IMG/VR virus record: IMGVR_UViG_3300027770_000025
Location: 248,001-312,000 of that record
Direction: 5' to 3' (one strand)
DNA length: 64,000 bases
The notes beneath the pieces were generated by a model. The model made no database searches and was not told the origin of the DNA. It saw only the letters and a list, made by a program, of their open reading frames with translations. Shown here piece after piece: positions 1 through 59,826 of the stretch. Position numbers and translations under genes: made by a program. Each line of letters starts with the position of its first letter. Position 1 is the first letter of the stretch.

Positions 1-1514
1 ATGGCACCACTTGATGACCAAGGTGCATAAGCACGATAGTAAACCGTAGTAACCCCAGTTCCGGTAACCCCTCTGGCAATAGTAAGATCCACTGTTGGTG
101 ATAGGAATGGCAAGGTTACCTTGGTTACACAAGAAGCTGAAGCCCCCGTGCCCACCCCTATAAACTTGAAACCTGAAGCTGATGTTGTTGGAGAATCTGA
201 GCTATTGTGAACTGTTATGTCAATCGATTCACCCATTTGAAGTCCTCCAGATCCGCCCCATCCTAAATTAGAGTCATTATATAGCCCAAGACCAACATGC
301 TGTCCTGAAACTATAGCTGGATTTATTATCATGGTATTTCCGTTATTTAAAGGAGATCCTAGCGTTGCAGAAGTTCTAGAAATAAAATACCAATTTATTG
401 CAGTAGCTCCGGAATAACCAACAGTTCTCTGAGTAGTAGACGGATATGATATACCCTCGACTGTTTTATTCATTTTAAGCTTTCCCTTAGTTGAAAGCCA
501 AACTTGCTTTCCTGTAGAGTTCACTAGTTCCAAATGATAAGTAAATTGGGAAATCGTACTATATGTGTCACCTATTCTGGTTGATCTAAATCCAGCTGTT
601 CCGGATGGGGTTATCTGTGTGTGGGGAGATGCAGATGCTACTGTTGCTATTGATCTAATAGGATCAAGAAAGCCTCCGGATACTCCGGATATATTAAGAT
701 ACTTACTTGTTACATTAAGCTGCCCAGTTAAATTGATATTATATCCGCCTGTTGCATATATTCCTGATGTCGAGTCTACTCCGTAGTTTATATCGGTACC
801 TTTTTGTGATTCCATTCTCAAAGATGAAAACCTCGATTCAAATCCCCCGGAAACCCCAATATCTAAAGTACCACCAGGGACTCTTATACCTAATGAATTG
901 TCGGTTGGTATAGTAGAAGGCCAATAAAAATATGGATGTTGTATATAATCGGTCACACTTCCATCTGCTACATCACTTCTAGAAAATTCTAAAAGTGGGG
1001 AATCATTTACAGCTGAATCGTTGGAAATAGAGAATTTAGAAAGCAATTCATTTATAACACCATTCTCAGGTGTAACATCGCTTAGTATAAACAGATAGTT
1101 CTTAGGTAATGTCTGAGCCATTTGTATAGCAGCACCAGTTCCCCCGTTATATGTAAAATCGTCTATTCTGAATAGATCTCCACCCGATCTTATATTATAT
1201 CCCGTTGGGTTCCACCCAGTTAACTCGAGGGTGTATATGTTACTGGTTATCGAGTCTATCCAATAATCCCCCTCCTGAGCGGATCCAGCAGGAGCTAAGG
1301 AAGAAACAAACCATCTAGTTCCTCTCGCACCATCTAATCCAGTATGGCCAAAAGTTCCAGAATCACCTATTGCTCCTCTGTCACCAGTAGGACCTACCGT
1401 ACCCTGAGTTCCCCCGTGTAGCTCCACTGTTTCGTCGAAGTTATTATTCAGCTTATTTATCAGTTGACTTTGGTTGTCGCTGTAGCTTAAGGCCTGTATA
1501 TTAGTATTTGGCAT
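1..1514 (-). CDS. Putative tail fibre/virion protein with short collagen-like segment (3' end runs off window)
   Basis: Not in the ORF track because it is truncated. ATG at 1514, open frame to the window edge: MPNTNIQALSYSDNQSQLINKLNNNF..., then 11 Gly-X-Y triplets (GTQ GTV GPT GDR GAI GDS GTF GHT GLD GAR GTR, about 1314-1412), then a Gly/Ser/Thr-rich body. Confidence 0.75.
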   Translation of the reverse strand, partial: MPNTNIQALSYSDNQSQLINKLNNNFDETVELHGGTQGTVGPTGDRGAIGDSGTFGHTGLDGARGTRWFVSSLAPAGSAQEGDYWIDSITSNIYTLELTGWNPTGYNIRSGGDLFRIDDFTYNGGTGAAIQMAQTLPKNYLFILSDVTPENGVINELLSKFSISNDSAVNDSPLLEFSRSDVADGSVTDYIQHPYFYWPSTIPTDNSLGIRVPGGTLDIGVSGGFESRFSSLRMESQKGTDINYGVDSTSGIYATGGYNINLTGQLNVTSKYLNISGVSGGFLDPIRSIATVASASPHTQITPSGTAGFRSTRIGDTYSTISQFTYHLELVNSTGKQVWLSTKGKLKMNKTVEGISYPSTTQRTVGYSGATAINWYFISRTSATLGSPLNNGNTMIINPAIVSGQHVGLGLYNDSNLGWGGSGGLQMGESIDITVHNSSDSPTTSASGFKFIGVGTGASASCVTKVTLPFLSPTVDLTIARGVTGTGVTTVYYRAYAPWSSSGA

Positions 1515-1517
1515 TTT

Positions 1518-4500
1518 TTATATCTTAGCTATTCTTATGTTAAACATTAAAGAGTAATAAAAACCAACTTCTGTTGGATATTCAAACTCGTATATTAAAT
1601 TAGTAATCGGTGTTAATTTATAGTTGTTATTTATAAAATATTCCAATTTATATCTATCGGTAGCAAATAGATCACCTCTAACTATTTCAAGGTTAGGTAT
1701 TGTTGAGTTTGCGATTTTCTTAACATAAAGATCAAATAAGTCACCTCTGTATATAGGGGCAACGTTTAAATCTATATAAGTGTTGATATCGTCATTTATT
1801 GATAAAGGATTGCCTACGCCAAACTGGGATATCATATTATCAATAAAGACTTTTTTTACCCCTGAATTTAACAGGTATCTTCTGAGTATTCTATCTAATC
1901 TTATTATACCTTTTATATTTCCCTGACCCGATCTATCTGAAAAATTCTGCCAAATAACTTCTGCGTTAGTGAATATTTTAAGATCTAGCTTATCGTAATC
2001 TACTCCAGAAAGATATGGGCCAACAGATCCTATTCCAGTACCGGAATTGCTCCTAGTTATTTCTTGGACACTCTTAATATAGCTGTCTATAGTTTCGTTT
2101 ATAATTTTTACATTTTTGCTACCTGTAGTTCTGGAAATTTCAAGAGTTATGTAATTATTAGCCTGGATAGGGTCGGGGGTCTGCATAACTTTAGAACCAA
2201 AGAAAGTTTTATATTCTTTCATAGCTCTTGTTCCTGCAACAGGAGATCCTGAATTAGTACCAATGTATCTGTTATAATATCCGGCATCCCATGAAGAAGA
2301 GAATATATTAAAATCTTTTTTTGCTATCGGGGTTAATCCTATTAATGGATAAACAGGCCCTTCCGGATACGAGCTTGCCGCAGCCAATATATTAGATCCC
2401 TCAGAAACTTTAGTATATCCTAGGTTTCTTGAAATACCGAAATACTCTTTATCGGGAGCAAAATTACAGTTTCTGAAAGAAAGATCTATCGAACTAGATC
2501 CGATTAATGTATCGGTTTTATCCCGATCAAAATGTATAACCTTTCTGAATATAGGCTCATATTCTCCAGAATATCTCGTCAAAATCGAAGGTCTTGTTGG
2601 ATCTGGGGTTCTTATAGCATATCCTGTTTCTACCCTAGAACCCTTTAAAGTTTGTGGTCCATTGAAATCACGAGAAACCAAAGATCCGCTAGGTTTAGTT
2701 ATCCTGGTTGGTCTTTCGAAATAAAGTTCAAATTCGTCAAGGGTTAATATTGTTGAACTTGAATTAGAGTCCCATTCATGAGTTGAATATTTTATGAATG
2801 GAGAGCTTCTGTTGAATTTATCTGCAATATACGAAACAGAGCATCTTGAAAGTAATCCTTTATAATACCTAGATCCACCTCCTATTTGTATAACTGGCTT
2901 GCCCTTATATACAGAAGATGGTCCGATAGGAACTGTAACAGGATTGGCCGTCGAGAAAGGAATAGTAAATAAGTATGCTGATCCGGTAGCGACCTTACCA
3001 AATTCTATAAAACTGGGACCAACCCCGGTTGGCCATGGATAAGTTGTAGACAGAGCTGAAACAATAAAACTTCCGTCCCCAGTAGAACTCGGTCCAGTAA
3101 CACCGTCCACATTGGGAACATATGTCGTATGTATTTCCTCTCTTAAATCTGTATCGTAATCTGGGTTATTTATTATGTTTATTATCCCGGTTTTTCTAGC
3201 TGTATTAACAACGCTACCTGACGGTAGGGAAAGATCTAAAGCAGCACTTAATTTTATATTATCTATAGAACAGAACTTCTGTGAGGAAGCTAAAGGTGAT
3301 CTTAGTTTCTCCTTGTCATTCAGTGTATAAAGTAGGGTGTAATCTAAAACTGGACTTCCCCCCGTTCCTCCAGTATAGCCAAGATTAAATGTTTTTTGAT
3401 CTTTTACAACAACATCGCAAACAAAAAGTATAAACTTCTGCTGGTCGTTTTCTATCACCTGATATTTAACAGGAGACTGTATAATTGTGGTATCCTCGGG
3501 TATTGCCCTTAATATAGCAGAGAATTTATAATCCTCGTAACCCCTATAGTATTTTATGTACCTGTCAGATTCAACAGATCCATCAAAAAAAGTATCTGAT
3601 CTCTTTTTTAATACTATTTTACAACCTCTGAATATTGTCTCATAATATCCTGATGCTTCGCTATAAACAAGAGGAGTAAATAACTCCTTAGTATAGTATG
3701 TCGTATCTCTAAATTCTGAAGTATAGTCGGAAGGTTCAGGGGTAAAGTATGACGCTAAATATAAAGCATCATCGGGATCAGAGCTTTTGGCTTTATCTAA
3801 ATCTATTTTATAAGGTAGATAACTATTCTGATTGTTCATAAACTCCTTAGGAAAATCTCTAGGTGGTTGTTCTAATAGGAACCATTCATGCGTTAGATAT
3901 TTAGGATCAGGAGTCGTTCTTTCAAAACTTGGTGAAAAGTTAGTAGGGGAGAAAGCCGGACTGCTGTTTAGCCTATACCTATTTCCTCTAGAATCTGTAC
4001 CTAAAGAAGATCCCCATTTATTTATATATGGGACTATTCTTGATATATTAGCTCTTTGTGTTGTGTAATTCTCTCTTAAATATTCGTATTCAGTATTAAG
4101 CTTACCATAATAAAATACCTCTTCCTTTGACGGATCTACGTTTTTAGGATCTAGTAGAATTCCCTGAATTCCTATAAACCCATTGAAAGTTTCTAAGTCT
4201 CCTGTGTATCCTATATTAGAATATGATGCAGAGTTAGTAGAATACGTAACGTTAGAATATTGAGCGGGAAATACAACAACATTACCAGAGGAAGAAGTTC
4301 TCGACTGAAGAGTATTTAATACTGCAGATGATGTGCTGAGATTTAAGCTGGGGTCGGAGACGGAGAACGAGGTATATCCGGTAGCCCCATAGAATAAATT
4401 TCCAGCATTATAAATATTGCCAGTCCCACCATAGCTTATTTGGCCTCTTTTTACAAAGTATGGGATGCCTGGTTTTATTACATTATCTGTATCAGGATTT

Positions 4501-7064
4501 ATCTGAAAATACTTGTAAGTCTCGGGGGTTGGTGAATAGCTATAATCAGAACTCCAGAAATCAAAATTGAATTCTTTTACATCAAAGAAAGTAAATACAC
4601 CTAAATTTAAAGAAGCAGAATCGTATACATTGAAAGATTGGTCTGAGCCTAGATTTATCTGAGAATATATGTCTTGTAGATTTAATACAAGCTTATATTC
4701 AAAATCATTAAATCCTATAATCTTTCTTGTAACAGGATCAATTTTTGGATCATCGACATAGCCATTAACAGAATCTATCATAGAAAATCCAGCATCTGTT
4801 TTAATGTAGTATCCGGGTAAAACTTGATTTGAGTATTTACTATCGAAGATTATTCTATTATTTTTATTTACTGTTCCGCCGATAAAATTAATATTCTTTT
4901 TTATACCCGATGCGTCTGTTCCGTTAATCTTAACATATCCCGGATAATTAAATGTTGAATATTCTTCCCAACTGCTAGAAGCGTCAGGCGAATTTGTGAA
5001 TTGCATACCCACTGTCGGACCAGTAGAACCTGCTATTGAATAATAGGTATTATCATAAAGAACTATGTCATCCGATACGTAATTTGTTATATTATCCCAT
5101 GATCCCTTATATTTTTGAATAAATTCTGGGTAGTTATCGAATATTGATATAGAGTAAGAGTTATTACCATATAATCCAGAATTCTTAACTCTAATAATAG
5201 ATGATTCGCCAGAATTACCATAATCCAGTGTTGAAGAATCTACATCGGAAAGAACCGACGAAAAAGCTAAAGCTATCTCATTGGTTGTACCACTAAAAGC
5301 ATTGAAATAATAGGAATTCCCCGTTGAATAATAAGATCCCCCTACCCATACCATCATCGAAGAATAATCAGCAGAGCTTATCAAATCATATCTTCTGGTT
5401 CCATCTTTTCTAGATCCATTTGGCCAATATAATTTTAACGTTAAAGGTATATTATTATCATATGCCTTTAGAAATTCAATCTCCACATAAGCTTTACCTG
5501 CTTCTTTTGCTAGATCCCCTTTGACAGTAACAAGTTTATCGTCACTTCCCGTGAAGTTCAGAAGATCTATCGTTTGATTTTGTATTACAAGTGATCCTGA
5601 AGTTGCTCCAGTTGAACCTGTTGCAGAGAATTCCCCAGTTGTATAATCAAAAGGTCCGTAAGAATACTTAGGCTCTGATCCTCCATATCCCCCGTAATCT
5701 TCAGTCCTTTTTAAGCTATAGAAACTATCATTTTTATCGGTTAAATAAAATAATTTATTAGGATCTAATAGATTAACATTATCGGATCCTGGTAAAAATC
5801 CAGTTGCATTTTCATAGAATAATCTAATACCCGAGGTAGCACCTATATTATATGGTTCATTGTTATAGTAATATCCAACATTATCTCTCGAAGGTATCGG
5901 GGTGTTTTCATTTCCTGATAAATTTCTATATTCGTAGAAAAATTCCCCATTAGTTCTGATTGTTGCAATGTCATTTCGTGAAACATACATACCAACATAT
6001 CTATTTATAGTATATAAATCTGAATCTGCATCATCAAAGAAAAACTCAAGATTTAATAAATTGGGGCACACAATTCCATTTCTAGAAAATCCAGAAGTTA
6101 TATAATCCTCCAAATCGATCATAGGGTCAGACTTAGCAGACGAAAGATATTGATTTAGTAGCTCTCCCTTTCTTGTATAAATACCTTCCGATACGCTAAT
6201 ACCTTTATAATAAGTATATGAATCATATCCCCAACTTACATCTAATGGCGAATTAGAAAACAGTTTATTATTAAATATCGATCTTATATATTTACCAATT
6301 TTTGTATTCTCTCTAAGATCAAAAGTTTTTATAGCGGTTGCGTTATTTAGTATCTTGTTTTTAAAAGTAGTGGATACATCATCTACGAGTGGAAGATTTT
6401 CAAGTTCAGCATAAACCGCAACCTTACCAGTACCACTTATTATACTATATGTTGAATTATTTGTGTTACCTTTAAAGATTTGCCCATCGTAATAATAAAT
6501 ATCATCACCTGAAGTATTCTTACCGTATGCTATCTTAAATTCTGTTGAAGTGTCATAATCAGCAATCACCTTATACCTCTTAGTTGCATCTATTTGGGTA
6601 ACGTTTGTTGAATATGGATAGGACAAAGGATTATCGAGCTTGAATATAACGAAAAAATCTGGTATCTCATTCTTAATCCATATCGGTGCAAAGTAGCTAA
6701 AGTCCTCGGGATAATTTTTATCTATTAATGCGGAGGCACCACTCGCATAGAAGAAATCATACTGGTCAGAAAAATATTGGGCTGGCTCATTTTCACCATT
6801 TGTGAATTTACCAACTTGAAATATTATATCATTTGAAATTTTACCATTTGAAAAGAAAGTAGAGACATCGCTGGCGTATGAATTTTCTCCTGTTACTGTG
6901 TACTTTTTAAATGCGTCGTTACTCAAAGTGTTGTTAACATCCATTGAATTAAACCAAACGCCACCCCCTGAATCTACTGAAATTTTAAAATTTCCAGTCA
7001 ATTTAGGATTTGTTCTAATAACAGAGAAAGAAGAGTTATAATCAAAAAGTCTGGATTGAGACAT
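1518..7064 (-). CDS. Large virion structural protein (tail/baseplate-associated), 1848 aa
   Basis: Long ORF, Tyr/Asn/Ser/Gly-rich, in a co-oriented structural gene run; no enzyme motif recognised. Confidence 0.65.
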   Translation of the reverse strand: MSQSRLFDYNSSFSVIRTNPKLTGNFKISVDSGGGVWFNSMDVNNTLSNDAFKKYTVTGENSYASDVSTFFSNGKISNDIIFQVGKFTNGENEPAQYFSDQYDFFYASGASALIDKNYPEDFSYFAPIWIKNEIPDFFVIFKLDNPLSYPYSTNVTQIDATKRYKVIADYDTSTEFKIAYGKNTSGDDIYYYDGQIFKGNTNNSTYSIISGTGKVAVYAELENLPLVDDVSTTFKNKILNNATAIKTFDLRENTKIGKYIRSIFNNKLFSNSPLDVSWGYDSYTYYKGISVSEGIYTRKGELLNQYLSSAKSDPMIDLEDYITSGFSRNGIVCPNLLNLEFFFDDADSDLYTINRYVGMYVSRNDIATIRTNGEFFYEYRNLSGNENTPIPSRDNVGYYYNNEPYNIGATSGIRLFYENATGFLPGSDNVNLLDPNKLFYLTDKNDSFYSLKRTEDYGGYGGSEPKYSYGPFDYTTGEFSATGSTGATSGSLVIQNQTIDLLNFTGSDDKLVTVKGDLAKEAGKAYVEIEFLKAYDNNIPLTLKLYWPNGSRKDGTRRYDLISSADYSSMMVWVGGSYYSTGNSYYFNAFSGTTNEIALAFSSVLSDVDSSTLDYGNSGESSIIRVKNSGLYGNNSYSISIFDNYPEFIQKYKGSWDNITNYVSDDIVLYDNTYYSIAGSTGPTVGMQFTNSPDASSSWEEYSTFNYPGYVKINGTDASGIKKNINFIGGTVNKNNRIIFDSKYSNQVLPGYYIKTDAGFSMIDSVNGYVDDPKIDPVTRKIIGFNDFEYKLVLNLQDIYSQINLGSDQSFNVYDSASLNLGVFTFFDVKEFNFDFWSSDYSYSPTPETYKYFQINPDTDNVIKPGIPYFVKRGQISYGGTGNIYNAGNLFYGATGYTSFSVSDPSLNLSTSSAVLNTLQSRTSSSGNVVVFPAQYSNVTYSTNSASYSNIGYTGDLETFNGFIGIQGILLDPKNVDPSKEEVFYYGKLNTEYEYLRENYTTQRANISRIVPYINKWGSSLGTDSRGNRYRLNSSPAFSPTNFSPSFERTTPDPKYLTHEWFLLEQPPRDFPKEFMNNQNSYLPYKIDLDKAKSSDPDDALYLASYFTPEPSDYTSEFRDTTYYTKELFTPLVYSEASGYYETIFRGCKIVLKKRSDTFFDGSVESDRYIKYYRGYEDYKFSAILRAIPEDTTIIQSPVKYQVIENDQQKFILFVCDVVVKDQKTFNLGYTGGTGGSPVLDYTLLYTLNDKEKLRSPLASSQKFCSIDNIKLSAALDLSLPSGSVVNTARKTGIINIINNPDYDTDLREEIHTTYVPNVDGVTGPSSTGDGSFIVSALSTTYPWPTGVGPSFIEFGKVATGSAYLFTIPFSTANPVTVPIGPSSVYKGKPVIQIGGGSRYYKGLLSRCSVSYIADKFNRSSPFIKYSTHEWDSNSSSTILTLDEFELYFERPTRITKPSGSLVSRDFNGPQTLKGSRVETGYAIRTPDPTRPSILTRYSGEYEPIFRKVIHFDRDKTDTLIGSSSIDLSFRNCNFAPDKEYFGISRNLGYTKVSEGSNILAAASSYPEGPVYPLIGLTPIAKKDFNIFSSSWDAGYYNRYIGTNSGSPVAGTRAMKEYKTFFGSKVMQTPDPIQANNYITLEISRTTGSKNVKIINETIDSYIKSVQEITRSNSGTGIGSVGPYLSGVDYDKLDLKIFTNAEVIWQNFSDRSGQGNIKGIIRLDRILRRYLLNSGVKKVFIDNMISQFGVGNPLSINDDINTYIDLNVAPIYRGDLFDLYVKKIANSTIPNLEIVRGDLFATDRYKLEYFINNNYKLTPITNLIYEFEYPTEVGFYYSLMFNIRIAKI

Positions 7065-7088
7065 ATTTTAAGCCCGTATTATGTTTTA

Positions 7089-10739: not shown

Positions 10740-10752
10740 TTAATTTTTAATA

Positions 10753-12957: not shown

Positions 12958-12981
12958 TAAATTTATTTTATTTTTATTCTA

Positions 12982-13896: not shown

Positions 13897-13924
13897 TTTA
13901 TTGTTTTATTTCTTTTTGAAGTGA

Positions 13925-13934
13925 AATATATATC
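13925..13934. promoter_or_regulatory. Putative bidirectional late promoter (GATATATA on minus, AATATATA on plus)
   Basis: aaatatatatc lies between divergent genes (start 13896 on minus, 13958 on plus) and matches the motif found upstream of many genes here. Confidence 0.55.
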
Positions 13935-13957
13935 TACGTCTCAGACAACACTTAAAT

Positions 13958-14125
13958 ATGGCAATACATAAAAACGAACTTACCATAATGGACACCAAAG
14001 ACATATCTTTAAGTCCAAAACCAGTGATTTATTTCCCTAAAACACTAAAAAATTCAGACAATTTTACTAGCATCAAAAAAACCACTCCGATTGGGAGAAA
14101 TCTGTGCGGTTACACAAAAAAATAA
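13958..14125 (+). CDS. Small hypothetical protein (55 aa) upstream of phoH
   Basis: Manually translated MAIHKNELTIMDTKDISLSPKPVIYFPKTLKNSDNFTSIKKTTPIGRNLCGYTKK*. It fills the intergenic gap and stops 7 nt before the phoH ATG; below the ORF-track cutoff. Confidence 0.4.
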   Translation: MAIHKNELTIMDTKDISLSPKPVIYFPKTLKNSDNFTSIKKTTPIGRNLCGYTKK

Positions 14126-14132
14126 ATATAAT

Positions 14133-14900: not shown

Positions 14901-14909
14901 TCCGAAGAT

Positions 14910-17900: not shown

Positions 17901-18944
17901 AAGAATCCATAAATCATTCGCGTGGATAGTTAGTCCATCCTGATTCGTATTGTGTCCTATTAGCTCTATACCAAGCACAGCATTTGAATTCAATGATGAA
18001 TTTGCTGTATTGAATTGCGTGTGTGATGTTCCATTAAAATGCCAAAGACCGGTTCCATCTCCAAGTTCCCCGTCTCCCATTGAATAAAAAACATGTCCAT
18101 TATCTCTTGCTTTCACACAAGTTATTGGTCCCCCACTAACCCCATAATTCCAGAATTCAAAACCATCAAAATACGAAATACCTATGTCAGTTCCGATCCA
18201 TAGGTTTCCATTCTCGTCAAAGTCTAAACAATATACGTTATCTGATATTATTCCGCTTGTGCTAGTGTTGTAAACTTTTGCCTGCTGGATATATTTTGAT
18301 CCGTTTGTTAAAGTTATGGTTTGTAATTTTCCTTGCGGAACAACAAAAAGTCCTTCCGAAGTTCCCATATAGTAAAGATAATCCTTACCGTCATACCCTT
18401 TAGTTTCTATATCATAGATATGCGGCCAAGTATAATCATCAACGGTTTCATCCCATTGATCTGTTTCTTTAAAATAATAAAATAATCTTCCACCGGTGGC
18501 TCCATTTATTCTTGTATAATCAGATGCACCGGTTCCTCCTACCCCGTTAAGTGGATTGATAAAAGCTAAAATATCGTCACCAAAGGGGCAAGCGTATATT
18601 AATGAAACTTCCTGAGGCTGATTAAAAGTTCCCAAAGCCTGGAATGTCCAGCTATCACCCTCGTCAACTTTATTAGTATTGATCCAAAAAACTGCAACCT
18701 GATTTATGTTAGCATTTCCTGCTGTTGGTCCTTGTGCTACTCCAACCCAGGCTTTATCCTCCGGATCTATTGATATACATCTGGTATCCAGATAGTATGG
18801 TGAAACCTGGGGAACTGCGGAGTTTGTGCTGTCGTAATATTCCCAGATTGACCCGTTGAATCTTCTAACATCCTGACCTGAAGCCCAAGCGTAAAATTCT
18901 TGATCTAGATCTATCTGATTAATATAAAGGGATGAATTAGGCAT
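14910..18944 (-). CDS. Large virion protein with beta-propeller (Reg_prop-like) repeats, probable receptor-binding/appendage protein
   Basis: IISDNVYCLDFDENGNLWIGTDIGISYFDG and FNTANSSLNSNAVLGI resemble two-component-regulator propeller repeats; C-terminal YTFVDAGYYTIYNQVEDSAGN is PKD-like. Confidence 0.65.
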   Translation of the reverse strand: MPNSSLYINQIDLDQEFYAWASGQDVRRFNGSIWEYYDSTNSAVPQVSPYYLDTRCISIDPEDKAWVGVAQGPTAGNANINQVAVFWINTNKVDEGDSWTFQALGTFNQPQEVSLIYACPFGDDILAFINPLNGVGGTGASDYTRINGATGGRLFYYFKETDQWDETVDDYTWPHIYDIETKGYDGKDYLYYMGTSEGLFVVPQGKLQTITLTNGSKYIQQAKVYNTSTSGIISDNVYCLDFDENGNLWIGTDIGISYFDGFEFWNYGVSGGPITCVKARDNGHVFYSMGDGELGDGTGLWHFNGTSHTQFNTANSSLNSNAVLGIELIGHNTNQDGLTIHANDLWILGYNQLSLFAYDLPHVYGSSKYAGATGWNFTYHTATGGGSPLPKVNKYTWTYPEWMVYDSSFLEYKHPGLDPRNLFLTAKLSDIADGRAGKQPYWNNWALPSFEQDQISESIQASEWEKSISYISGASGNIGMFRVTSSTTQTFLGEKKYYVGGYIQPDIYTGNYSIQFGYYADNTPAILSDYGPSLNSGTLSTYNSVNNGKTGFIVSYSERGNVESILPFKGFSTEVQSLCSSEDGLYLYASGTFNRFIEVGEFVWGAYGFPITTGGATGAPVGITNPNVPGATAGTYPGIGVPSFGTVVINSPWRVSVGSGDSVANTYCDFGFTGFPAGTGGSYDNVNLVYLSFINGIGGNEFSSINNRLTGQSLIIVQGGNTAYYRIDQIYRDTNSFGIRTTYQSGATAAFPYTNGTSITIQVCQWTPSVYPYTIANAGSKTDSNAAYVVKIGRDLGSSSTFTDINGVTGDYESNIRKKYRINSFRYFPPVSTVALPYPGGTVSTKIDSSRYHVNLAITHTSNTPVIFSSLKNEWDRTGDISTVPYYIGDLASNEFGAYIKLDSDNLDLVEIKSTSGSTGGFSIEDIKSSNNENGFIITGQSSGTFNMMGLNILHPSPSASKNYPFYIISGPTANGITGGIVDIGGTSSYNGIKKIITAKDNSGYYVNTIRGDYGQGVTGTYFGSQIVLGSTGQNYLYTAEITDQGTLRDISYNSTGVLDRDMGFLAFDKINESQFFTSYQINTPGLTGYSVALLKTNNANKNLDLQNLGTFEGDLTFSKDTSSNVFIFGVNTSGSTGGTGSFISFGSTGGFSTLSEQYYPELGINLGNIISRPGSGAWTWCDVHSTDNYMEIPLLSTVVFNNYASNIYGKKNNKWILSNSETKDELLNIKGSPYFIYTFVDAGYYTIYNQVEDSAGNIYEVSKPGFIKVIDHKDKRPDDTRPDFVDSSDYGYPNPPFLARDYQAMRLGKDLMYQEMEILQANKGQFGSAIVIPNNPDSTFNRE

Positions 18945-19001
18945 CTATCTTTTTTTAAATTGTATTGTATATATTTGAATTTTAATAACAGGGATATTAA
19001 A

Positions 19002-20732
19002 TTATGGACTGCCGAAATACCATCCTCTTACAGGACCAGTAGATCCGGGGTTGGCTATCTGATATGGGTTGGCTATTCTATTTGTATTGAAAGAAATCCA
19101 ATTTGTTTTACCTATGGTTGCTGTTGTAGGAACTCCTCGCCTCCCAGCCCAAGGACCGTTGTCGCTTAGATCTACTGCAGCTAGAAAAAGGCCCGAACCC
19201 CCCCAGTCGTTATCTATAATTGAAATTTTAAGGCCATTAAAAGTATTTGGATCTACTAATCCTATATTATACATCCATGCATAATCGGGAGAAGCCGAAG
19301 CAACAATGTTATTTTCAAACCCGTTTCCATTACTAACTAAAGCAGCATTTATTAGACTTGCAACACCTAATCCTGCTCCTGTATCCTGCATAAATACCAA
19401 TGTACCATCGGGGGAATTTCCCACACCCCCTGAAATTAATATATCAGATATTGTAACATCAACAGTCATATCATAGCCAGATTCGATATTATTTATACAA
19501 GGTGAAACCGTGCTAAATCTCAGGGTTAAATATAGTGTAACAGTACCTGATACATACGATGCAGAGGGAAGACAAGCCCCACCGTATCCCCCACTAGCAC
19601 CTCCTGCGCCATCAAGTTCATATTCATAAGCTACAGGATATTCACCGCTATAAAAGGCTACCTCTAATGCTTTAGAAGACTGGTACCCTATGGAAAATTC
19701 ATTAAAAATTAGATTCGATACCTGTGTACTTGTCCAATACCTGTTACTAACTAAAGATTTTCCATAGCCTTGTATATCAGCAAAATAAAATATATTACTG
19801 AAATAAGTACCAAGATCACCAGGAAGCATATAATTACCCAGTGTGTACCTTGTTAATGATCCCCATCCGGTTGCCCCAGGTACACCAAGAGCATTAAAAG
19901 CAAGACTGGAAGCAATATATTGTCCAGTAAACAAACCATAATTTAAACTGCTGGGCATTGTTATATCTTGCGAAGAAGACCAATATGATGTAATTTCTCC
20001 CTGAGCTCTGAATTGAGTGTTATTTATAGGAATAGGTACCGCAGAACTACCAGTGGTATTTACAGAATATGCATTACCAGAACCTGATATACCTAATGCT
20101 GTTAATAGAATTCCCGTGTCTGCCACGGATTGATAATGCAGGCCTAATGTAAAGGGAGATGCTAAATAATTATAACGCTCAAATAAGCCATTTTTGCTAT
20201 ATGTCACAGTCACGGAAGAAGATGCAGTGTTACCCAAAAGGCTAGTTAAAATAACAGAGGATGTTGATACGTAAGTTGAATATGTAGCACCAGACTCAGA
20301 TCCGGTTAAATCCAACCAGCTGTAAATTAGAGCACCCGTTTGGTTGTTTATCGTGGTAAGATTTGGGTTATTTAAACCAGCAAGGTTCCATGTATAGTAG
20401 GCAGCACTAGCTGTAGATCCTACTGCAGTATATGATACTGTGGTTCCCATAGGGACAACAGTGGTCTGGTTGCTGATCATTGTCATTGAGATATTCTCAG
20501 GGACTACAACAATTATGTTTGACTTCTCGTTGGAAGAACTGATGCTTCCGATGCTTACTGTCAATTTAGCACTAAATCCAGTATTTGATGGAGAAACATA
20601 TCTAACAATAGGATTAGTTGCTGTTGCCCCAGTAGGTGTTCCGCCGGGAAAATTCCAGATCCTTCCAGTAGGTGATCCCTCTGAGATGTCCTGATATAAA
20701 ATGTAATCCCCTTGGCTTATTGATATTGACAT
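19002..20732 (-). CDS. PKD-domain virion protein
   Basis: N-terminal YQDISEGSPTGRIWNFPGGTPTGATATNPIVRY is a PKD/Ig-like signature. Confidence 0.65.
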   Translation of the reverse strand: MSISISQGDYILYQDISEGSPTGRIWNFPGGTPTGATATNPIVRYVSPSNTGFSAKLTVSIGSISSSNEKSNIIVVVPENISMTMISNQTTVVPMGTTVSYTAVGSTASAAYYTWNLAGLNNPNLTTINNQTGALIYSWLDLTGSESGATYSTYVSTSSVILTSLLGNTASSSVTVTYSKNGLFERYNYLASPFTLGLHYQSVADTGILLTALGISGSGNAYSVNTTGSSAVPIPINNTQFRAQGEITSYWSSSQDITMPSSLNYGLFTGQYIASSLAFNALGVPGATGWGSLTRYTLGNYMLPGDLGTYFSNIFYFADIQGYGKSLVSNRYWTSTQVSNLIFNEFSIGYQSSKALEVAFYSGEYPVAYEYELDGAGGASGGYGGACLPSASYVSGTVTLYLTLRFSTVSPCINNIESGYDMTVDVTISDILISGGVGNSPDGTLVFMQDTGAGLGVASLINAALVSNGNGFENNIVASASPDYAWMYNIGLVDPNTFNGLKISIIDNDWGGSGLFLAAVDLSDNGPWAGRRGVPTTATIGKTNWISFNTNRIANPYQIANPGSTGPVRGWYFGSP

Positions 20733-20775
20733 TAAAGAATAAGATAGTTTGATTTATATATCCAGATTAATATGA

Positions 20776-23700
20776 TCATGGATAAAGTTGGTATGTGAAT
20801 TCGGCAACCAATAATCCGCTACCACCTATTTGTGAAGGTGGCGGAGCACTCTGAGAATTGGATACCCCCGAATCATTTACAGAAACATTTATTGGCGGGG
20901 TATTTAAAGGTAAATTACCGCTTTCATTAGGAATCGGTCTATAATAAAAATTCTGAATATTAGGATCCGCTGAATTATTTAGCTGATCTGCTAATTCCCC
21001 TATAGTCAAAGAAGCCGATCCTGGCTGTATAGTCATTCCCGTAGGAAATGGATAAAATTCGTTACCCGTGCTAATCTTTAAGAAATCACCTGGTGTTATG
21101 TTATGTAGTTCATATCCGCCAAGCCAATCGTTATTAAACTCATAATCAAACCATGTATGGGCATAGCCTTCGTCCCATCCATTATCCGTGAATATGTCCC
21201 AATTTATCTTTTTAGTCCCCCAATATTTTAAATTTGCATTGGGTAGAGCTGAACTAGATTCAGACCAATAAACGTATGTTTCGGCAGAACTAGATCCACC
21301 TGATAATCCCACAGAATCTGAAATTACAGAAATAGATCCAGTAGCTTCATATGTTAGTAATACACCATTTTGATCCGCACCTAGTTCATCGGGTGCACTG
21401 ATAACCAAAGTAACGGGATCGTTACTTGGATCCGTGCAAGAAGCAAAATAATCGGGATAGGTTCTAAGCGAATTAACAGAAGATGCTATAGCATTTACCG
21501 TTCTGTATAGGGAATCTCCAGATTCACTAGAACCTACTAATCTTCCACCTACATAGACAGAAATGCTTCCTGCCCCGGTAACATATTGGTTGGTAAATAC
21601 AGCGGAATCTACAGATAATCTGGAAGGTCCGGTTAAGCCTACTGTATTGCTCCACGAAGAACTGATTATTGTGGATACAGTAAAGGTATTATTAGATCCA
21701 GAAGGAACGGTTATTATCCATCTCCCTAGTAATTCCGGTATAGTATCAAATAAGGTTACTTCTTCGCCTGTGCTAAGATTATGTGGGGTAGCACATATCA
21801 CTGTGGCAAAACTATATTGTCCAGATATAATTAGATATGATGTTATCTCCGTTATAGCTATATTCGATTGGGTAAACGAAATATACCCAGTTGCTCCTAT
21901 AGGATCAGTGTTTACCTTAACATAAGCATCTTGTCCCTCTTCTGATTTATTTCCATAGGTAGCAAAATCTAGGATTTCGCTAGGTATGGTCTTTTCTAAA
22001 ACCTCTATCGTCTCACCCTCAGCAGGATATTCCCATATTGAATTATAATCTTCCCATCCCTTAAATACATTTCTCCATGTGTAATCCTCTACCTCTCTAT
22101 ATCTGGTCCACGCATCAATATCTATAATCTTTGGACTCACCGTTATAGCTCCATTCTTTATCGCTACTGTTTTAGCGTTAAAGGCGTCATAGACGTTGCA
22201 TGTTACCTGATAAACCCCAGTGTATGGTACAAAGTGGGCTAAGGTATAAAAGTCCAGTATAGACCCTCTAAATTGGAAATTATAAGGGCTTCCTTGTTGT
22301 GTTGCTGGTTTATTTATTATCCACTCAATATCAACCATGTTAGAGAAATCTACGTTTCTCCAGTTAAGCAAAGAATAATTCTGTATGGTTGAGAATAATG
22401 ATGCTTCGTCTGTGTTTACTGTCGTTGAGTTATCAAGGAAAACAGTATAGATCCCAGTGGAATAACTAACAGCTGTTACTTTACCGAATATGTTTGTTGG
22501 CTTGTATAAAACTCTGCTACCAACTTTAAATACAGGAATAAGAATGGATGACCAATTTATATTCAGCTCGTCCCAAGTCCATCTATCTAAAATAAGCTCC
22601 AATACTATTGGCATACCCAAAGGTGTATCGTAGATTAATCCTGTTGTTGGATCGGTATAAGCTGGTGGATCATATTTTCCATCACCTAATTCAAGCAATT
22701 CGTCATTCTGTTTAAGATCATAGAAATTAGTGATTGCATTCAATAAAGAATCATTCTGGGTAACCGTGTATAATTGCTGATTGGATAAAGGATCTATTAT
22801 ATTTCCCAAATCCGAAATCTCCGCCGGTGCAACTTCTATTATCCCATTAAGTAGGATTTTATTGGGGGAAGAATAATAATATACAGGTGATGTCTGCTGT
22901 GGTGTTACATTCCAAATTAAGCTAGGACCCCCTGAGGTAACTCCGTTATTAATTATACCTAATGGATCTATCTGGGAAAGTCCCGGATCGGTTGTTATAT
23001 AAAAATCAAATTCTGCTGTGGAAATACTAAATTCATAGGTATTACCAGCATTAATATTTAATACCGGGTTAGGTCCATTTAATCCAGTTGGTCCAGTAAG
23101 TCCAGCTATATAAAGCGCACTTCCTGTTCCCCCCGACACCTCCACGTAAGCATCAAACTTATTATAATATGAAGAAGGTGTCTGTATAGAAGTGCTTAAA
23201 GGTCTAGTAGAAAAATTTCTAAGATCCTCGATAAATCCAAAATCCGGGGTAACCTTAATGTCAGTATAAAACCCCGATTCAATATCAGGTCTTTGCATGA
23301 CATCTGTCCATGCCTTAGTATTATAAACGTTGAAATAAATACCCTCACCAGTTATATCAATGATTCTTGCATTAAGTGGTAAATAATCTCTCTTAAGCCT
23401 TTCCTTAAGGGCAAACATTTTTATAAGAACTTCCTCTTGAGTAAATTTAAAATTATCAACAACTTCAGGATACCCGTAATCTGAATCATTTCCCGTGGTT
23501 TTATTTATATCATAATATAGACCGAATAAAGAGGTTTTTTTATACGTTCTGCTAGGTAGAATTGTGGTATCAGAGGAAACATCAAGAACATATTGTCCAT
23601 CAGCATTTGGTCCATAAGTTTGAACCAATTTATATTTACCCGAATTTGGATTGTCTAAAACATCTCCTATCGAATAACTCTGGGTATATCCTCCAGATTG

Positions 23701-24966
23701 CTGTCTTTTTATCGCATTGAGGAATTGCTTATTCTGTTGTAGTGGTGATTCTAATCTTGCACTCCGGTATTGTAGGTTTAGCCAATATTCTTTTATTCTT
23801 AAATCCTGATATCCAAAGAATCTGATTGCATTGATTAGACCCTTGTAACTTCCTATGTAAGGAAATATCTCCTCTCCTGCTATTAATAACTCTTTCCTCT
23901 TATCATTTATTTCTAGGTAATTTGGAAGGGGTTCAGAAGGATCATGATCTCTTAGTATAATTGAATCGTCCTGGTAAAAAGCTCTACCCATGTTTTTTAA
24001 CATGACACTAAATCTCTCATCCTCACCGACTATTTCACCATAAAAATCCATCTCGATTATTTTCACAGGCGTGCCTGTACTAATATCCTCTATGATTAAT
24101 TTTCTCTCATAGATATTAGATGCTAAGTCAGTTGCATTAATAGCAACATTTATGGATAAAGCCTCCGAATTTATTAAAGATGTTGAAACATAACCATTAC
24201 CAGAAAGACTGTCAGTAGGACTGGCATCCACATTATAGACCAAGTTGGGATAGCTAACTATTAAAGGCTGCCCGTCACCCCCTTCAAGTTGGTCTTCTAT
24301 TTTGTATGTGAATATAATTTCAGATACGTCAGTTTCACCATAGCTATCATTATACCATCTGGATCTCCATTTACCAGCAGTAGCTCCAGTGGCTCCCGTA
24401 TGAGGGAGTCCATATTCTAGATTGCCTGAGTTATTAAGCGTCTGAACTATGAATATCTGCTGGTTCTCGTAAAGTCCGGAGGAAACCGGATCAAAATATA
24501 TGTTACCCTTAAAATATCCGCCAGGTCTGTTAGAATAAGTTGCATTAAAATAAATTTGATTATTTAGACTTATCAATCTTTGCCCATTAATAGTATCGAC
24601 TTCAAAGTTAACCCTTAAATATGTTGAATTATTTACAACAGATGATATCTTAGCTTCAAATTCCCCCTGGTTTGCTATTCTACCTTCAATGTATACATCT
24701 GCACCATTAAGTATAGCGCTGTTTATCGAATCACCCCAAGCTACAATGTTAAATCCATTTACATCAGCTATATTCAAATCGATATAAGATGGATTACTGT
24801 CCAGCTGACTAACTGATATCTGGCCCTCTGAAGAAACCGATGATGAAGTTACGTACGTAAACTTTTGATCAAGTTCACTAGGACCTGTTGCCCCAATGTA
24901 GTCAAAGTTTAGCGGACTTCCAGCCTTATCATAAAAATTAAGCCTTCTATAGAAAAATTCTGACAT
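20776..24966 (-). CDS. Large baseplate wedge-associated protein, 1396 aa
   Basis: YIGSYKGLINAIRFFGYQDLRIKEYW resembles the P2 gpI/T4 gp7-type wedge motif; lies two genes downstream of the gp6-like gene. Confidence 0.55.
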   Translation of the reverse strand: MSEFFYRRLNFYDKAGSPLNFDYIGATGPSELDQKFTYVTSSSVSSEGQISVSQLDSNPSYIDLNIADVNGFNIVAWGDSINSAILNGADVYIEGRIANQGEFEAKISSVVNNSTYLRVNFEVDTINGQRLISLNNQIYFNATYSNRPGGYFKGNIYFDPVSSGLYENQQIFIVQTLNNSGNLEYGLPHTGATGATAGKWRSRWYNDSYGETDVSEIIFTYKIEDQLEGGDGQPLIVSYPNLVYNVDASPTDSLSGNGYVSTSLINSEALSINVAINATDLASNIYERKLIIEDISTGTPVKIIEMDFYGEIVGEDERFSVMLKNMGRAFYQDDSIILRDHDPSEPLPNYLEINDKRKELLIAGEEIFPYIGSYKGLINAIRFFGYQDLRIKEYWLNLQYRSARLESPLQQNKQFLNAIKRQQSGGYTQSYSIGDVLDNPNSGKYKLVQTYGPNADGQYVLDVSSDTTILPSRTYKKTSLFGLYYDINKTTGNDSDYGYPEVVDNFKFTQEEVLIKMFALKERLKRDYLPLNARIIDITGEGIYFNVYNTKAWTDVMQRPDIESGFYTDIKVTPDFGFIEDLRNFSTRPLSTSIQTPSSYYNKFDAYVEVSGGTGSALYIAGLTGPTGLNGPNPVLNINAGNTYEFSISTAEFDFYITTDPGLSQIDPLGIINNGVTSGGPSLIWNVTPQQTSPVYYYSSPNKILLNGIIEVAPAEISDLGNIIDPLSNQQLYTVTQNDSLLNAITNFYDLKQNDELLELGDGKYDPPAYTDPTTGLIYDTPLGMPIVLELILDRWTWDELNINWSSILIPVFKVGSRVLYKPTNIFGKVTAVSYSTGIYTVFLDNSTTVNTDEASLFSTIQNYSLLNWRNVDFSNMVDIEWIINKPATQQGSPYNFQFRGSILDFYTLAHFVPYTGVYQVTCNVYDAFNAKTVAIKNGAITVSPKIIDIDAWTRYREVEDYTWRNVFKGWEDYNSIWEYPAEGETIEVLEKTIPSEILDFATYGNKSEEGQDAYVKVNTDPIGATGYISFTQSNIAITEITSYLIISGQYSFATVICATPHNLSTGEEVTLFDTIPELLGRWIITVPSGSNNTFTVSTIISSSWSNTVGLTGPSRLSVDSAVFTNQYVTGAGSISVYVGGRLVGSSESGDSLYRTVNAIASSVNSLRTYPDYFASCTDPSNDPVTLVISAPDELGADQNGVLLTYEATGSISVISDSVGLSGGSSSAETYVYWSESSSALPNANLKYWGTKKINWDIFTDNGWDEGYAHTWFDYEFNNDWLGGYELHNITPGDFLKISTGNEFYPFPTGMTIQPGSASLTIGELADQLNNSADPNIQNFYYRPIPNESGNLPLNTPPINVSVNDSGVSNSQSAPPPSQIGGSGLLVAEFTYQLYP

Positions 24967-54319: not shown

Positions 54320-54344
54320 GATTTTAGTTGTTTTTTTTTGTTTT

Positions 54345-59809: not shown

Positions 59810-59826
59810 AAAAAAAGCTTTTCTTG

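What the first reader, a model, noticed from the sequence alone, without database searches (positions are those of the whole stretch)
1..24966. G-x-T-G motif enriched across outward-facing virion proteins: candidate sequon for virion surface modification
Seen: the tetrapeptide G-x-T-G (GATG, GSTG, GGTG, GVTG, GLTG, GPTG, GYTG, plus GxTA variants) recurs as dispersed, non-collagen hits in otherwise dissimilar structural proteins. Manual counts are about 15 in the 1344-aa protein (roughly 1-2 expected from my estimate of its G and T content), about 8 in the 1848-aa and about 7 in the 1396-aa, with more in the 734-, 576-, 304- and 1216-aa proteins and the first ORF. It also forms PGATGATGA in a variable region of the major capsid protein (about 53785-53812). 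I did not see it in the enzymes or the putative internal proteins (47.6-52.5 kb, 56.4-59 kb). Established: some mycobacteriophage virions are O-glycosylated by phage glycosyltransferases, and the Bacteroidota host O-glycosylation sequon D-(S/T)-x is different. Inference: GxTG may mark Thr sites for a phage-directed glycosylation or other modification that coats the particle.
Basis: partly seen in the sequence, partly recalled or inferred. Interest (0 to 1): 0.8.

Follow-up and report, generated by a model that had tools for sequence, protein, structure and literature searches.

The report
Clade-specific Gly-x-Thr-Gly motif in tail proteins
The outer tail proteins of an uncultivated giant freshwater-type phage clade carry six to ten times more copies of the four-residue pattern Gly-x-Thr-Gly than chance, fold or phage ancestry explains, which fits a recognition site read by a shared factor such as a threonine-modifying enzyme, although no modification or enzyme has been shown.

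Summary
GxTG occurs 15, 8 and 7 times in the 1344-, 1848- and 1396-aa proteins, against 1.5, 0.8 and 0.65 expected. It is the top a-x-b-c pattern in the tail module (41 vs 6.2), survives 20-residue block shuffles, and is in-frame only.

It holds across about 70 related metagenomic contigs down to roughly 30% identity. It spans unrelated architectures: β-propellers, β-sandwiches, collagen-like fibres and a capsid loop. It is gained at 3–3.5 times more alignment columns than matched control patterns.

It is absent from 106 ORFs of seven other phages, 126 cellular propellers of the same fold family (O/E 0.5) and 62 non-tail ORFs of the same contig. The motif is G-[small/apolar]-T-[G>A]; Thr:Ser is 18:1 and charged x residues are excluded.

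Composition, one repeated fold, decayed collagen and a generic β-turn preference are therefore rejected. The best reading (confidence about 0.4) is a lineage-specific short linear motif read by a shared trans-acting factor, with Thr modification such as O-glycosylation the leading candidate.

Nothing shows modification. No glycosyltransferase lies in 110 kb around the module, and capsid and tail motif loads do not co-vary. A clade-specific structural loop idiom remains a close rival.

The parts
14910..18944 (-). 1344-aa distal-tail protein. It has an N-terminal 7-bladed WD40/Reg_prop-like propeller (residues 3-363), a conserved low-confidence linker (361-445) and a second, much-inserted propeller (462-1160). 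It carries 15 GxTG sites.
   Evidence: Counts are, coordinates. The AF2 model has pTM 0.83. Fold matches reach Z 24-27 and a PDB profile hit to BT4663 has E 2.5e-14. The family mean is 11.6 vs 1.17.
18492..18539 (-). Two near-invariant GxTG sites (residues 136-139 GGTG and 148-151 GATG) in one conserved loop of the first propeller.
   Evidence: G136 and T138 are invariant, and both motifs are at least 94% conserved across 51 sequences at 35-81% identity. Residues 137-140 have pLDDT below 50.
17823..17834 (-). Near-invariant GATG at residues 371-374 (context SSKYAGATGWNF) in the conserved linker.
   Evidence: 98% conserved.
17091..17102 (-). Near-invariant GATG at residues 615-618, in a long conserved Gly/Pro/Thr-rich loop of the second propeller.
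   Evidence: 96% conserved, with x varying among P, A and V.
16008..16019 (-). Near-invariant GITG at residues 976-979, at the start of a β-strand.
   Evidence: 96% conserved, with x varying among V, I, S and L; secondary structure.
20776..24966 (-). 1396-aa tail protein of mixed α/β architecture with Ig-like/β-sandwich domains. It lies directly downstream of the baseplate-wedge gene and carries 7 GxTG sites.
   Evidence: Orthologues show 473 vs 60.9. Sites 25, 191 and 612 are 70-85% conserved.
1518..7064 (-). 1848-aa tail protein with 8 GxTG sites.
   Evidence: Orthologue fragments show 112 vs 22.8. PHROG 31887, function unknown.
1..1517 (-). C-terminal 505 residues of a 517-aa collagen-like tail fibre that runs off the window. 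It has 4 GxTG in the window and 5 in the full protein.
   Evidence: PHROG tail-fibre hits and a sub-threshold Pfam Collagen hit. The full gene is L073:15551-17104. It has a 10-triplet G-X-Y run.
7089..10739 (-). 1216-aa tail protein with 1 GxTG (residue 993).
   Evidence: Family O/E is 2.3 and the site is 66% conserved. PHROG 29329.
10753..12957 (-). 734-aa tail protein with GTTGAYGMTG at residues 174-183.
   Evidence: Family O/E is 10.8. The two sites are 100% and 82% conserved.
12982..13896 (-). 304-aa Gly/Thr-rich tail protein with 2 GxTG.
   Evidence: Family O/E is 2.5. The sites are 73-78% conserved.
19002..20732 (-). 576-aa variable tail protein with a weak PKD-domain hit and 2 GxTG.
   Evidence: Pfam PKD at 23.2 bits. 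Homologues average about 2.3 motifs at non-conserved positions, occupying 39 distinct columns vs 12.3 for controls.
53786..53806 (-). GATGATG in a hypervariable loop of the T4 gp23-type major capsid protein (gene 52589-54382). It is an exact 9-nt tandem duplication.
   Evidence: A core 'TGxTGATAG' is conserved in one subclade and absent in another.
25500..27224 (-). gp6-like baseplate wedge subunit. It marks the upstream border of the GxTG-rich block and is itself motif-free.
   Evidence: PHROG 219, E 7e-33. Orthologues show 1 vs 8.5.

Best explanation
G-[small/apolar]-T-[G>A] is a short linear motif under lineage-specific selection on the motif itself. It occurs in the distal tail proteins of one uncultivated giant-phage clade, that is, the baseplate-periphery and fibre proteins encoded downstream of the baseplate wedge.

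The same tetrapeptide has accumulated in at least ten non-homologous proteins of different folds. It has not accumulated in the same folds elsewhere, in other phages, or in the rest of this genome. The most economical cause is therefore a common trans-acting reader of an exposed Thr flanked by glycines. The leading candidate is a phage- or host-encoded cytoplasmic enzyme that modifies the Thr hydroxyl, with O-glycosylation the best-precedented chemistry.

**Shown:** the enrichment, its protein-level nature, clade specificity, cross-fold distribution, positional conservation plus recurrent gain, and the residue preferences.
**Inferred:** that a shared factor reads the motif.
**Speculative:** that the factor is a glycosyltransferase.
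For: - **Robust enrichment.** 41 vs 6.2 in the window's tail set and 50 vs 7.8 over ten tail proteins. It is the top pattern in an unbiased scan, robust to local shuffles, and in-frame only.
- **Kept across the clade.** All seven orthogroups in 69 related loci are enriched, O/E 2.3-10.8. The 1344-aa family stays at about 10x down to roughly 30% identity.
- **Not a fold property.** 126 cellular Reg_prop propellers give 47 vs 94.8. The families have different architectures and no profile similarity within or between them.
- **Not a general phage-fibre property.** 106 ORFs of T4, crAss001, lambda, T5, phiKZ, B40-8 and LR745206 give 30 vs 24.4, none below p 0.01.
- **Selected as a motif.** GxTG occupies 63, 55 and 39 distinct alignment columns, against 17.9, 15.2 and 12.3 for control patterns of equal expectation.
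- **Tight chemical definition.** Thr:Ser is 1097:61. D/E/K/R/N/Q/H at x total 11 of 1097. Asp and Asn are not favoured at the Thr position, unlike generic turns.
- **Loop tips.** Three of the four isolated short low-pLDDT segments in the two models sit exactly on motifs, P about 4e-4.
- **Precedent.** Thr in G-P-T-G repeats of BclA3 is O-GlcNAcylated by SgtA (PMC7157674). Lak phages have a core Glyco_tranf_2_4 protein (PMC8346664). A possibly related aquatic lineage has four core putative glycosyltransferase orthogroups (PMC12619734).
Against: - No modification has been observed, and these phages are uncultivated.
- No glycosyltransferase or other obvious protein-modifying domain occurs in the window or in contig positions 221-331 kb, which include the whole structural block. 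In the BclA3/SgtA precedent the enzyme gene is adjacent to its substrate gene.
- Five sites are nearly invariant over deep divergence with strict glycines. This is more typical of a backbone-conformation constraint than of a glycan site.
- Ser is rarely tolerated, whereas SgtA accepts Ser.
- Half the sites directly precede a β-strand and 27% form tight hairpins, so a structural role is plausible.
- Capsid and tail motif loads do not co-vary (rho -0.52).
- Other proteins of the genome show no avoidance of the motif (5 vs 5.45).
- Orthologue counts are phylogenetically non-independent.
Confidence: 0.4

Rival explanations
1. The motif is a clade-specific structural loop idiom that acts only in cis. 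G-x-T-G is a preferred chain-reversal or strand-capping loop: the last Gly is left-handed, Thr caps the backbone and x packs against the sheet. The clade's receptor-binding proteins reuse it when loops are remodelled. No other molecule reads it.
For: - 73% of sites abut a strand end or start (null 46%, p 0.01), 50% directly precede a strand (null 27%, p 0.02), and 27% are tight hairpins.
- Both glycines and Thr are invariant at several sites while x varies among small or apolar residues.
- A-T-G resembles the GB1 hairpin loop DDATKT (PMC4239826) and its designed NPATGK variant (my own knowledge, not verified here).
Against: - A generally good loop should be enriched in β-rich proteins elsewhere, and it is not. 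Cellular propellers of the same family give O/E 0.5 and seven other phages give 1.2.
- β-rich non-fibre virion proteins of the same genome are at or below expectation.
- Other GxxG tetrapeptides sit next to strands equally often (77%), so placement does not explain the Thr specificity.
- The generic turn residues D, N and S are not favoured.
- Several of the most conserved sites lie in long, low-confidence loops, not tight turns.
- This reading offers no reason for the restriction to one lineage.
Confidence: 0.3
2. The loops are functional contact points. GxTG loops dock the distal tail proteins onto one another, onto a shared assembly chaperone or decoration protein, or onto a common host surface polymer.
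For: - The restriction to baseplate-periphery and fibre proteins, cross-fold spread and clade specificity also fit a shared binding partner.
- The most conserved sites lie in conserved but low-confidence loops and linkers that may order only on assembly.
- A conserved TGxTGATAG core persists inside a hypervariable capsid loop.
Against: - A tetrapeptide with two glycines and a variable x offers very little binding surface.
- Many sites turn over rapidly in variable regions, which is unusual for assembly interfaces.
- No candidate partner was identified.
Confidence: 0.15
3. The motif is a remnant or by-product of collagen-like G-X-Y sequence, spread by triplet slippage.
For: - Three fibre paralogues carry genuine 10-triplet G-X-Y runs.
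- Tandem GxTGxTG is over-represented (4 vs 0.1-0.4).
- Three tandem pairs are exact or near-exact 9-nt duplications.
Against: - Only 4-5 of 50 hits lie in G-X-Y runs of three or more triplets.
- The genuine collagen runs place Thr at Y in only 4 of 30 triplets.
- Dispersed single sites use varied codons and sit in globular propeller and sandwich domains.
- Glycine periodicity around the sites is weak.
Confidence: 0.05
4. The excess is a chance or compositional artefact of Gly/Thr-rich proteins.
For: The tail proteins are rich in Gly (up to 14%) and Thr (up to 13%).
Against: - Whole-protein and 20-residue block shuffles never approach the observed counts.
- Patterns of the same composition in a different order are not enriched.
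- Equally Gly/Thr-rich cellular propellers are depleted.
Confidence: 0.01

Closest known systems
BclA/BclA3 collagen-like exosporium glycoproteins and the SgtA O-GlcNAc transferase (Bacillus, Clostridioides difficile)
   Same: The acceptor Thr sits in a G-x-T-G context, flanked by glycines with a small residue at x. The modification is made in the cytoplasm or mother cell on a surface-structure protein (PMC7157674).
   Different: - BclA sites are long tandem GPT repeats in a collagen triple helix. Here they are single dispersed units in globular β-domains.
- sgtA lies next to bclA3, whereas no transferase lies near this module.
- SgtA accepts Ser, whereas Ser is rare here.
- Nothing here is shown to be modified.
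Mycobacteriophage virion O-glycosylation (Freeman et al. 2023, as summarised in PMC12619734)
   Same: It would be a phage-directed glycan decoration of virion proteins made by cytoplasmic transferases.
   Different: - In mycobacteriophages the glycans are on C-terminal parts of capsid and tail-tube subunits, and the phages carry recognisable glycosyltransferase genes.
- Here the candidate sites are a defined tetrapeptide dispersed through distal tail proteins, the likely host is Gram-negative (Bacteroidota-type), and no enzyme is identified.
Sequon-based glycan decoration of viral surface proteins (for example N-x-S/T sites on enveloped-virus spikes; my own knowledge)
   Same: A short motif is enriched in surface proteins. 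Some sites are conserved and others turn over between positions while the count is maintained.
   Different: The chemistry, cellular compartment and enzymes differ. The analogy is evolutionary only.
Asp-box (S-x-D-x-G-x-T-W) β-hairpin of propellers (PMC2716378)
   Same: It has a G-x-T core at a hairpin in β-propellers. Site 371 (S-K-Y-A-G-A-T-G-W) resembles it.
   Different: - The residue after Thr is Gly, not an aromatic.
- Ser at -4 and Asp at -2 are not enriched.
- The motif also occurs outside propellers, and cellular propellers lack it.
GB1-type hairpin loop D-D-A-T-K-T and the designed N-P-A-T-G-K (PMC4239826; design from my own knowledge)
   Same: An x-A-T-G chain reversal with a left-handed Gly. 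Ala is the most favoured x here (GATG is 29-fold enriched).
   Different: Such a universal loop preference predicts enrichment in β-proteins generally, which the controls do not show.

Membership tests
Collagen triple-helix repeat (Pfam PF01391) | Uninterrupted runs of many G-X-Y triplets | tested here: not met
   Only the three 517/571/582-aa fibre paralogues have 10-triplet runs. Of the 50 GxTG hits, 45-46 lie outside any run of three or more triplets. The Pfam hit in the first ORF is below cut-off (20.1 vs 27.2 bits).
BclA/SgtA-type Thr-glycosylated GXT proteins | Tandem GPT/GXT repeats as acceptor region | tested here: not met
   The sites are dispersed single units, at most two in tandem.
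BclA/SgtA-type Thr-glycosylated GXT proteins | Dedicated glycosyltransferase gene adjacent to the substrate gene | tested here: not met
   There is no glycosyltransferase Pfam hit in the window or on record in contig positions 221-331 kb. The rest of the genome (at least 348 kb) was not examined.
BclA/SgtA-type Thr-glycosylated GXT proteins | Thr carries an O-linked sugar | not testable with these tools
   This needs mass spectrometry of virions or recombinant protein.
Bacteroidota general O-glycosylation sequon D-(S/T)-(A/I/L/V/M/T) | Asp immediately before the Ser/Thr and an aliphatic residue or Thr after it | tested here: not met
   The residue before Thr is Asp in 1 of 1097 family-wide instances, and the residue after Thr is Gly by definition. 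That system also acts in the periplasm (my own knowledge).
Mycobacteriophage-type virion glycosylation | Phage glycosyltransferases with the structural genes; glycans on C-terminal parts of capsid and tail-tube subunits | tested here: not met
   No transferase lies in or near the structural block (same calls as above). The candidate sites are internal and dispersed, and the capsid site is an internal loop. Glycans themselves are not testable here.
Asp-box β-hairpin | S-x-D-x-G-x-T-[W/F/Y] | tested here: not met
   Position +1 after Thr is Gly or Ala. The -4 and -2 positions show no Ser/Asp signal.
Generic type I + G1-bulge hairpin loop | Short loop between two antiparallel strands; a preference shared by β-proteins in general; D/N/S/T at the position before Gly | tested here: inconclusive
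   27% of the 22 modelled sites are tight hairpins and 73% abut a strand. But D and N are not favoured, and there is no enrichment in other β-rich proteins.
Reg_prop / WD40-like β-propeller (applies to the 1344-aa protein only) | Seven-bladed propeller fold with Reg_prop repeats | tested here: met
   Pfam Reg_prop scores 19.4 bits, just under the 20.4 cut-off. A profile hit to the BT4663 sensor has E 2.5e-14. Fold matches reach Z 23-27 for residues 3-363 and 462-1160.

The most novel reading that the evidence does not exclude
GxTG is the acceptor sequon of a so far unidentified cytoplasmic Thr-O-glycosyltransferase, or another Thr-modifying enzyme, encoded by this giant-phage clade or its host. 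The enzyme decorates at least ten distal tail proteins at about 50 sites per genome and, in some subclades, a capsid loop. This would be the first sequon-defined virion modification system in phages of Gram-negative hosts, and it could be predicted from sequence alone.
Probability: 0.22. Interest if true: 0.85.

Novelty: new variant of a known kind. Interest (0 to 1): 0.62.

Why it matters
Short linear motifs that accumulate convergently in unrelated proteins are the signature of sequons and docking sites in eukaryotes and their viruses. To my knowledge, and in the literature searched, nothing comparable has been described for phage tail proteins.

If the motif marks modified threonines, virion glycosylation would extend beyond mycobacteriophages to giant phages of Bacteroidota-type hosts. 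It would also come with a sequence rule that lets sites be predicted in metagenomes. That would bear on receptor recognition, on shielding from host or animal defences, and on engineering receptor-binding proteins.

If the motif is purely structural, it is still an unusual case of a lineage-restricted loop idiom. It would be a useful marker for recognising the distal tail proteins of this otherwise unannotatable clade.

Tried and rejected
1. **Stop-codon recoding.** Lak-type recoding could have corrupted the ORFs. Code 11 gives tightly packed ORFs, 32 of 36 ending in TAA, and no read-through is needed.
2. **DNA-level cause.** The GG....AC.GG pattern occurs essentially only in frame 0 and with mixed codons. 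Only three tandem pairs show 9-nt duplication.
3. **Duplicated domains.** BLASTP among and within the tail proteins finds nothing below E 0.1. hhalign of five putative blade units, a self-comparison of residues 450-1165 and all family pairs give probabilities of at most 16%.
4. **Per-blade motif.** A signature recurring once per blade in the C-terminal propeller is not supported by profile comparison.
5. **Orthologues in deposited phages.** tblastn of the 1344-aa protein against 50,697 genomes gives no hit. The syntenic region of LR745206 holds only a weak homologue of the 1396-aa protein, with no enrichment.
6. **Capsid-tail covariation.** This was a test of a shared factor. No positive correlation was found.
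7. **Motif avoidance in other proteins.** None was found.
8. **Walking the 348-kb contig for glycosyltransferases.** I stopped after about 110 kb (221-331 kb) with none found. The remaining two thirds or so could not be covered within the look-up cap.
9. **Literature.** There are no papers on a GxTG motif. The NPATGK design paper is not in the library.
10. **Moraphage membership.** Whether the phage belongs to the 'moraphage' lineage could not be tested because no moraphage sequences were available.
11. **Solvent exposure.** Thr exposure could not be computed because the structure tool returns no coordinates.

Full report
**What the window is**

All long ORFs lie on the - strand and are tightly packed under the standard bacterial code. 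32 of 36 end in TAA and no read-through is needed. Recognisable genes include:
- a T4 gp23-type major capsid protein (52589-54382) and a prohead protease (54345-56309)
- a gp5-like baseplate hub OB domain (32700-33401) and a gp6-like baseplate wedge subunit (25500-27224; PHROG 219, E 7e-33)
- scattered enzymes: AsnB-type asparagine synthase, NUDIX, an S1-domain protein and PhoH

It holds seven large proteins with essentially no family annotation, plus the start of a collagen-like tail fibre.

The capsid and protease region is distantly similar (65-71% over short stretches) to Lak and other 460-735-kb 'huge phage' genomes. The window is 100% identical to a 348,582-bp metagenomic contig.

No shuffle in 2000 reaches the observed counts.
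- The capsid GATGATG is at residues 193-199, nt 53786-53806.
- The enzymes and the 47.6-52.5 kb and 56.4-59 kb blocks contain none.

An unbiased scan of all 8000 a-x-b-c patterns over the tail set puts GxTG first by far (41 vs 6.2, p about 2e-20). Thr occupies 41 of 99 G-x-Y-G sites.

The excess is not local composition. Shuffling within 20-, 30-, 50- or 100-residue blocks gives 6.5-7.3 with a maximum of 18. It is also not a DNA feature, because the nucleotide pattern occurs almost only in the coding frame and with mixed codons.

Including three further fibre genes just beyond the window edge (517, 571 and 582 aa, with 5, 3 and 5 sites), ten tail proteins carry 50 sites against 7.8 expected.

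**Definition of the motif**

The motif is G-[A>S,G,V,L,P]-T-[G>A].
- GATG alone is 29-fold enriched.
- Position 1 is Gly (6.4x; other residues 1-2x).
- Position 3 is Thr (6.4x), Ser only 1.9x, and Asp and Asn about 1x.
- Position 4 is Gly (6.4x) or Ala (3.5x).
- The next residue is often G, A or P.

At recurrent sites across the families, Thr outnumbers Ser 1097 to 61 when both glycines are kept. D, E, K, R, N, Q and H together fill x only 11 times in 1097, against about 28% of the background composition.

**It is a property of a whole clade**

The 1344-aa protein has a deep full-length family. Across 51 members at 35-81% identity the mean is 11.6 sites against 1.17 expected. Five sites (136, 148, 371, 615, 976) are at least 94% conserved as G-x-T-G with x free.

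In 69 related viral contigs every tail orthogroup is enriched:

| Orthogroup | O/E |
|---|---|
| 734 aa | 10.8 |
| 1344 aa | 9.3 |
| 1396 aa | 7.8 |
| 1848 aa | 4.9 |
| 576 aa | 3.4 |
| 304 aa | 2.5 |
| 1216 aa | 2.3 |

The adjacent wedge and adaptor-like genes are not enriched (1 vs 8.5 and 2 vs 2.1). Representatives at about 30-39% identity still show about 10x (115 vs 11.3). These counts are phylogenetically non-independent, but they show that the trait is maintained.

**It is selected as a motif**

Besides the conserved sites, GxTG appears at many different alignment columns. It occupies 63, 55 and 39 distinct columns in the 1344-, 1396- and 576-aa families. Control patterns with the same expected frequency average 17.9, 15.2 and 12.3. 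In the highly variable 576-aa family no site is positionally conserved, yet homologues average about 2.3 sites.

**It is not one repeated fold**

The AlphaFold model of residues 1-1200 of the 1344-aa protein (pTM 0.83) has three parts:
- a seven-bladed WD40/Reg_prop-like propeller (residues 3-363, Z about 24)
- a conserved but low-confidence linker
- a second, much-inserted propeller (462-1160, Z 27 to the CylK propeller)

The 1396-aa protein models as a mixed α/β multi-domain protein. Its only matches are Ig-like and β-sandwich folds (pTM 0.34, with domain pLDDT of 80-90).

The capsid site lies in a hypervariable loop of a gp23-fold protein. Sequence and profile comparisons find no similarity within or between the families.

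**It is not a generic structural preference**

Two sets of controls show no enrichment:
- Virion and fibre proteins, and all ORFs of at least 300 aa, in structural regions of T4, crAss001, lambda, T5, phiKZ, Bacteroides phage B40-8 and the huge phage LR745206: 106 ORFs, 30 vs 24.4, none below p 0.01.
- 126 cellular multi-repeat Reg_prop propeller proteins, the fold family of the N-terminal domain, with similar Gly and Thr content. These are actually depleted (47 vs 94.8).

Within the same contig, 62 non-tail ORFs are at expectation (5 vs 5.45).

**Where the sites sit**

In the two models 73% of the 22 sites abut a strand end or start (null 46%). Half directly precede a strand (null 27%) and 27% form tight hairpins. 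Other GxxG tetrapeptides behave the same way (77%), so placement does not explain the Thr specificity.

Several of the most conserved sites (136, 148, 615) lie in long conserved loops. Three of the four isolated short segments with pLDDT below 50 coincide exactly with motifs (137-140 and 807-809 in the 1344-aa protein; 625-628 in the 1396-aa protein; P about 4e-4). This suggests protruding, flexible loop tips. Solvent exposure could not be computed because coordinates are not returned.

**Collagen and slippage**

Genuine collagen-like runs of 10 triplets occur only near the N-termini of the three fibre paralogues, and they place Thr at Y in just 4 of 30 triplets. Tandem GxTGxTG is over-represented (4 vs 0.1-0.4), and three pairs are exact or near-exact 9-nt duplications. 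Slippage therefore expands some sites locally but cannot explain the dispersed ones.

**The enzyme question**

No glycosyltransferase domain is found in any window protein. None is on record for the genes in contig positions 221-331 kb, which include the whole structural block and its flanks. The remaining two thirds or so of the contig could not be examined.

Three literature points are relevant:
- Lak phages have a core, Lak-specific Glyco_tranf_2_4 + pyruvyltransferase protein (PMC8346664).
- A recently described lineage of large aquatic Bacteroidota phages, possibly related to this one, has four core putative glycosyltransferase orthogroups. Our contig also encodes an HSP70. Membership of that lineage is untested (PMC12619734).
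- SgtA O-GlcNAcylates Thr in the GPT repeats of BclA3 but also accepts Ser, and its gene is adjacent to its substrate gene (PMC7157674).

The residue before Thr is almost never Asp, so this is not the Bacteroidota D-(S/T)-x sequon.

A simple prediction of one factor acting on both capsid and tail fails. Tail enrichment stays at 4.3-7.1x in contigs whose capsid loop lacks the motif.

**Interpretation**

Composition, DNA bias, domain duplication, a single repeated fold, decayed collagen and a universal turn preference are each contradicted by a direct test. What remains must explain one fact: unrelated proteins of one functional module in one lineage converge on the same tetrapeptide.

A shared trans-acting reader does this most economically. 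It would be a Thr-modifying enzyme, with glycosylation the best-precedented chemistry, or less likely a docking partner. I give the trans-acting reading about 0.4, of which glycosylation specifically is about 0.2-0.25.

The close rival (about 0.3) is a cis-acting loop idiom peculiar to this clade. It is favoured by the invariant glycines, the strand-flanking placement and the missing enzyme. It offers no reason for the lineage restriction.

Noticed in passing
window 14091-14900 (+): A PhoH-like ATPase gene sits on the opposite strand in the middle of the otherwise co-directional tail-protein block.
   Followed up: no
window 45546-46952 (-): An AsnB-type asparagine synthase with an N-terminal glutamine amidotransferase domain is embedded, co-oriented, in the structural gene block. 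This is an unusual position for a metabolic enzyme.
   Followed up: no
window 59000-59836 (-): A protein with a borderline Pol-β-type nucleotidyltransferase domain (NTP_transf_2, 20.3 bits vs cut-off 21; PHROG 36119, E 4e-38) lies next to an 874-aa unknown near the capsid genes. It is one conceivable protein-modifying enzyme and was not examined further.
   Followed up: no
L075:2112-3722 and L075:3732-5345 (just beyond the right window edge): Two adjacent genes of 536 and 537 aa both hit Portal_T4. The portal is either duplicated or split.
   Followed up: no
window 17610-17864 (residues 361-445 of the 1344-aa protein): This is one of the most conserved stretches of the family, yet AlphaFold gives pLDDT of only about 41-46. 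It probably orders only on assembly with a partner.
   Followed up: partly
L073:15551-20607 (window 1-1517 plus two genes beyond the left edge): Three tandem fibre genes (517, 571 and 582 aa) of similar size and layout, probably paralogues, each carry about 10 collagen-like G-X-Y triplets at residues 34-65.
   Followed up: partly
window 53786-53806 and L073:18859-20607: Exact 9-nt tandem duplications (GGT GCT ACT and GGA GCT ACT) create GATGATG in the capsid loop and in the 582-aa fibre. They indicate recent triplet slippage.
   Followed up: yes
L162:13802-14209, 15546-17435 and 18824-19822: A SET-domain protein, an HSP70/DnaK homologue and a peptidase M28 are encoded left of the fibre module. 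The DnaK recalls the 'moraphage' lineage of large aquatic Bacteroidota phages (PMC12619734).
   Followed up: partly
window 29898-31088 (-): A protein with an S1 RNA-binding domain (E 1.7e-17) lies among the baseplate-region genes.
   Followed up: no
window 52589-54382 and 54345-56309 (-): The listed capsid ORF starts at a TTG that overlaps the protease ORF by 38 nt. The public gene call for the capsid protein is 576 aa, not 597, so the true start is probably further downstream.
   Followed up: no
window 14910-18944 vs deposited phage genomes: The 1344-aa protein has no tblastn match in 50,697 deposited phage genomes. Yet it has more than 150 clusters of homologues in metagenomes, on contigs up to 435 kb. 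The clade is abundant but unrepresented among deposited genomes.
   Followed up: yes
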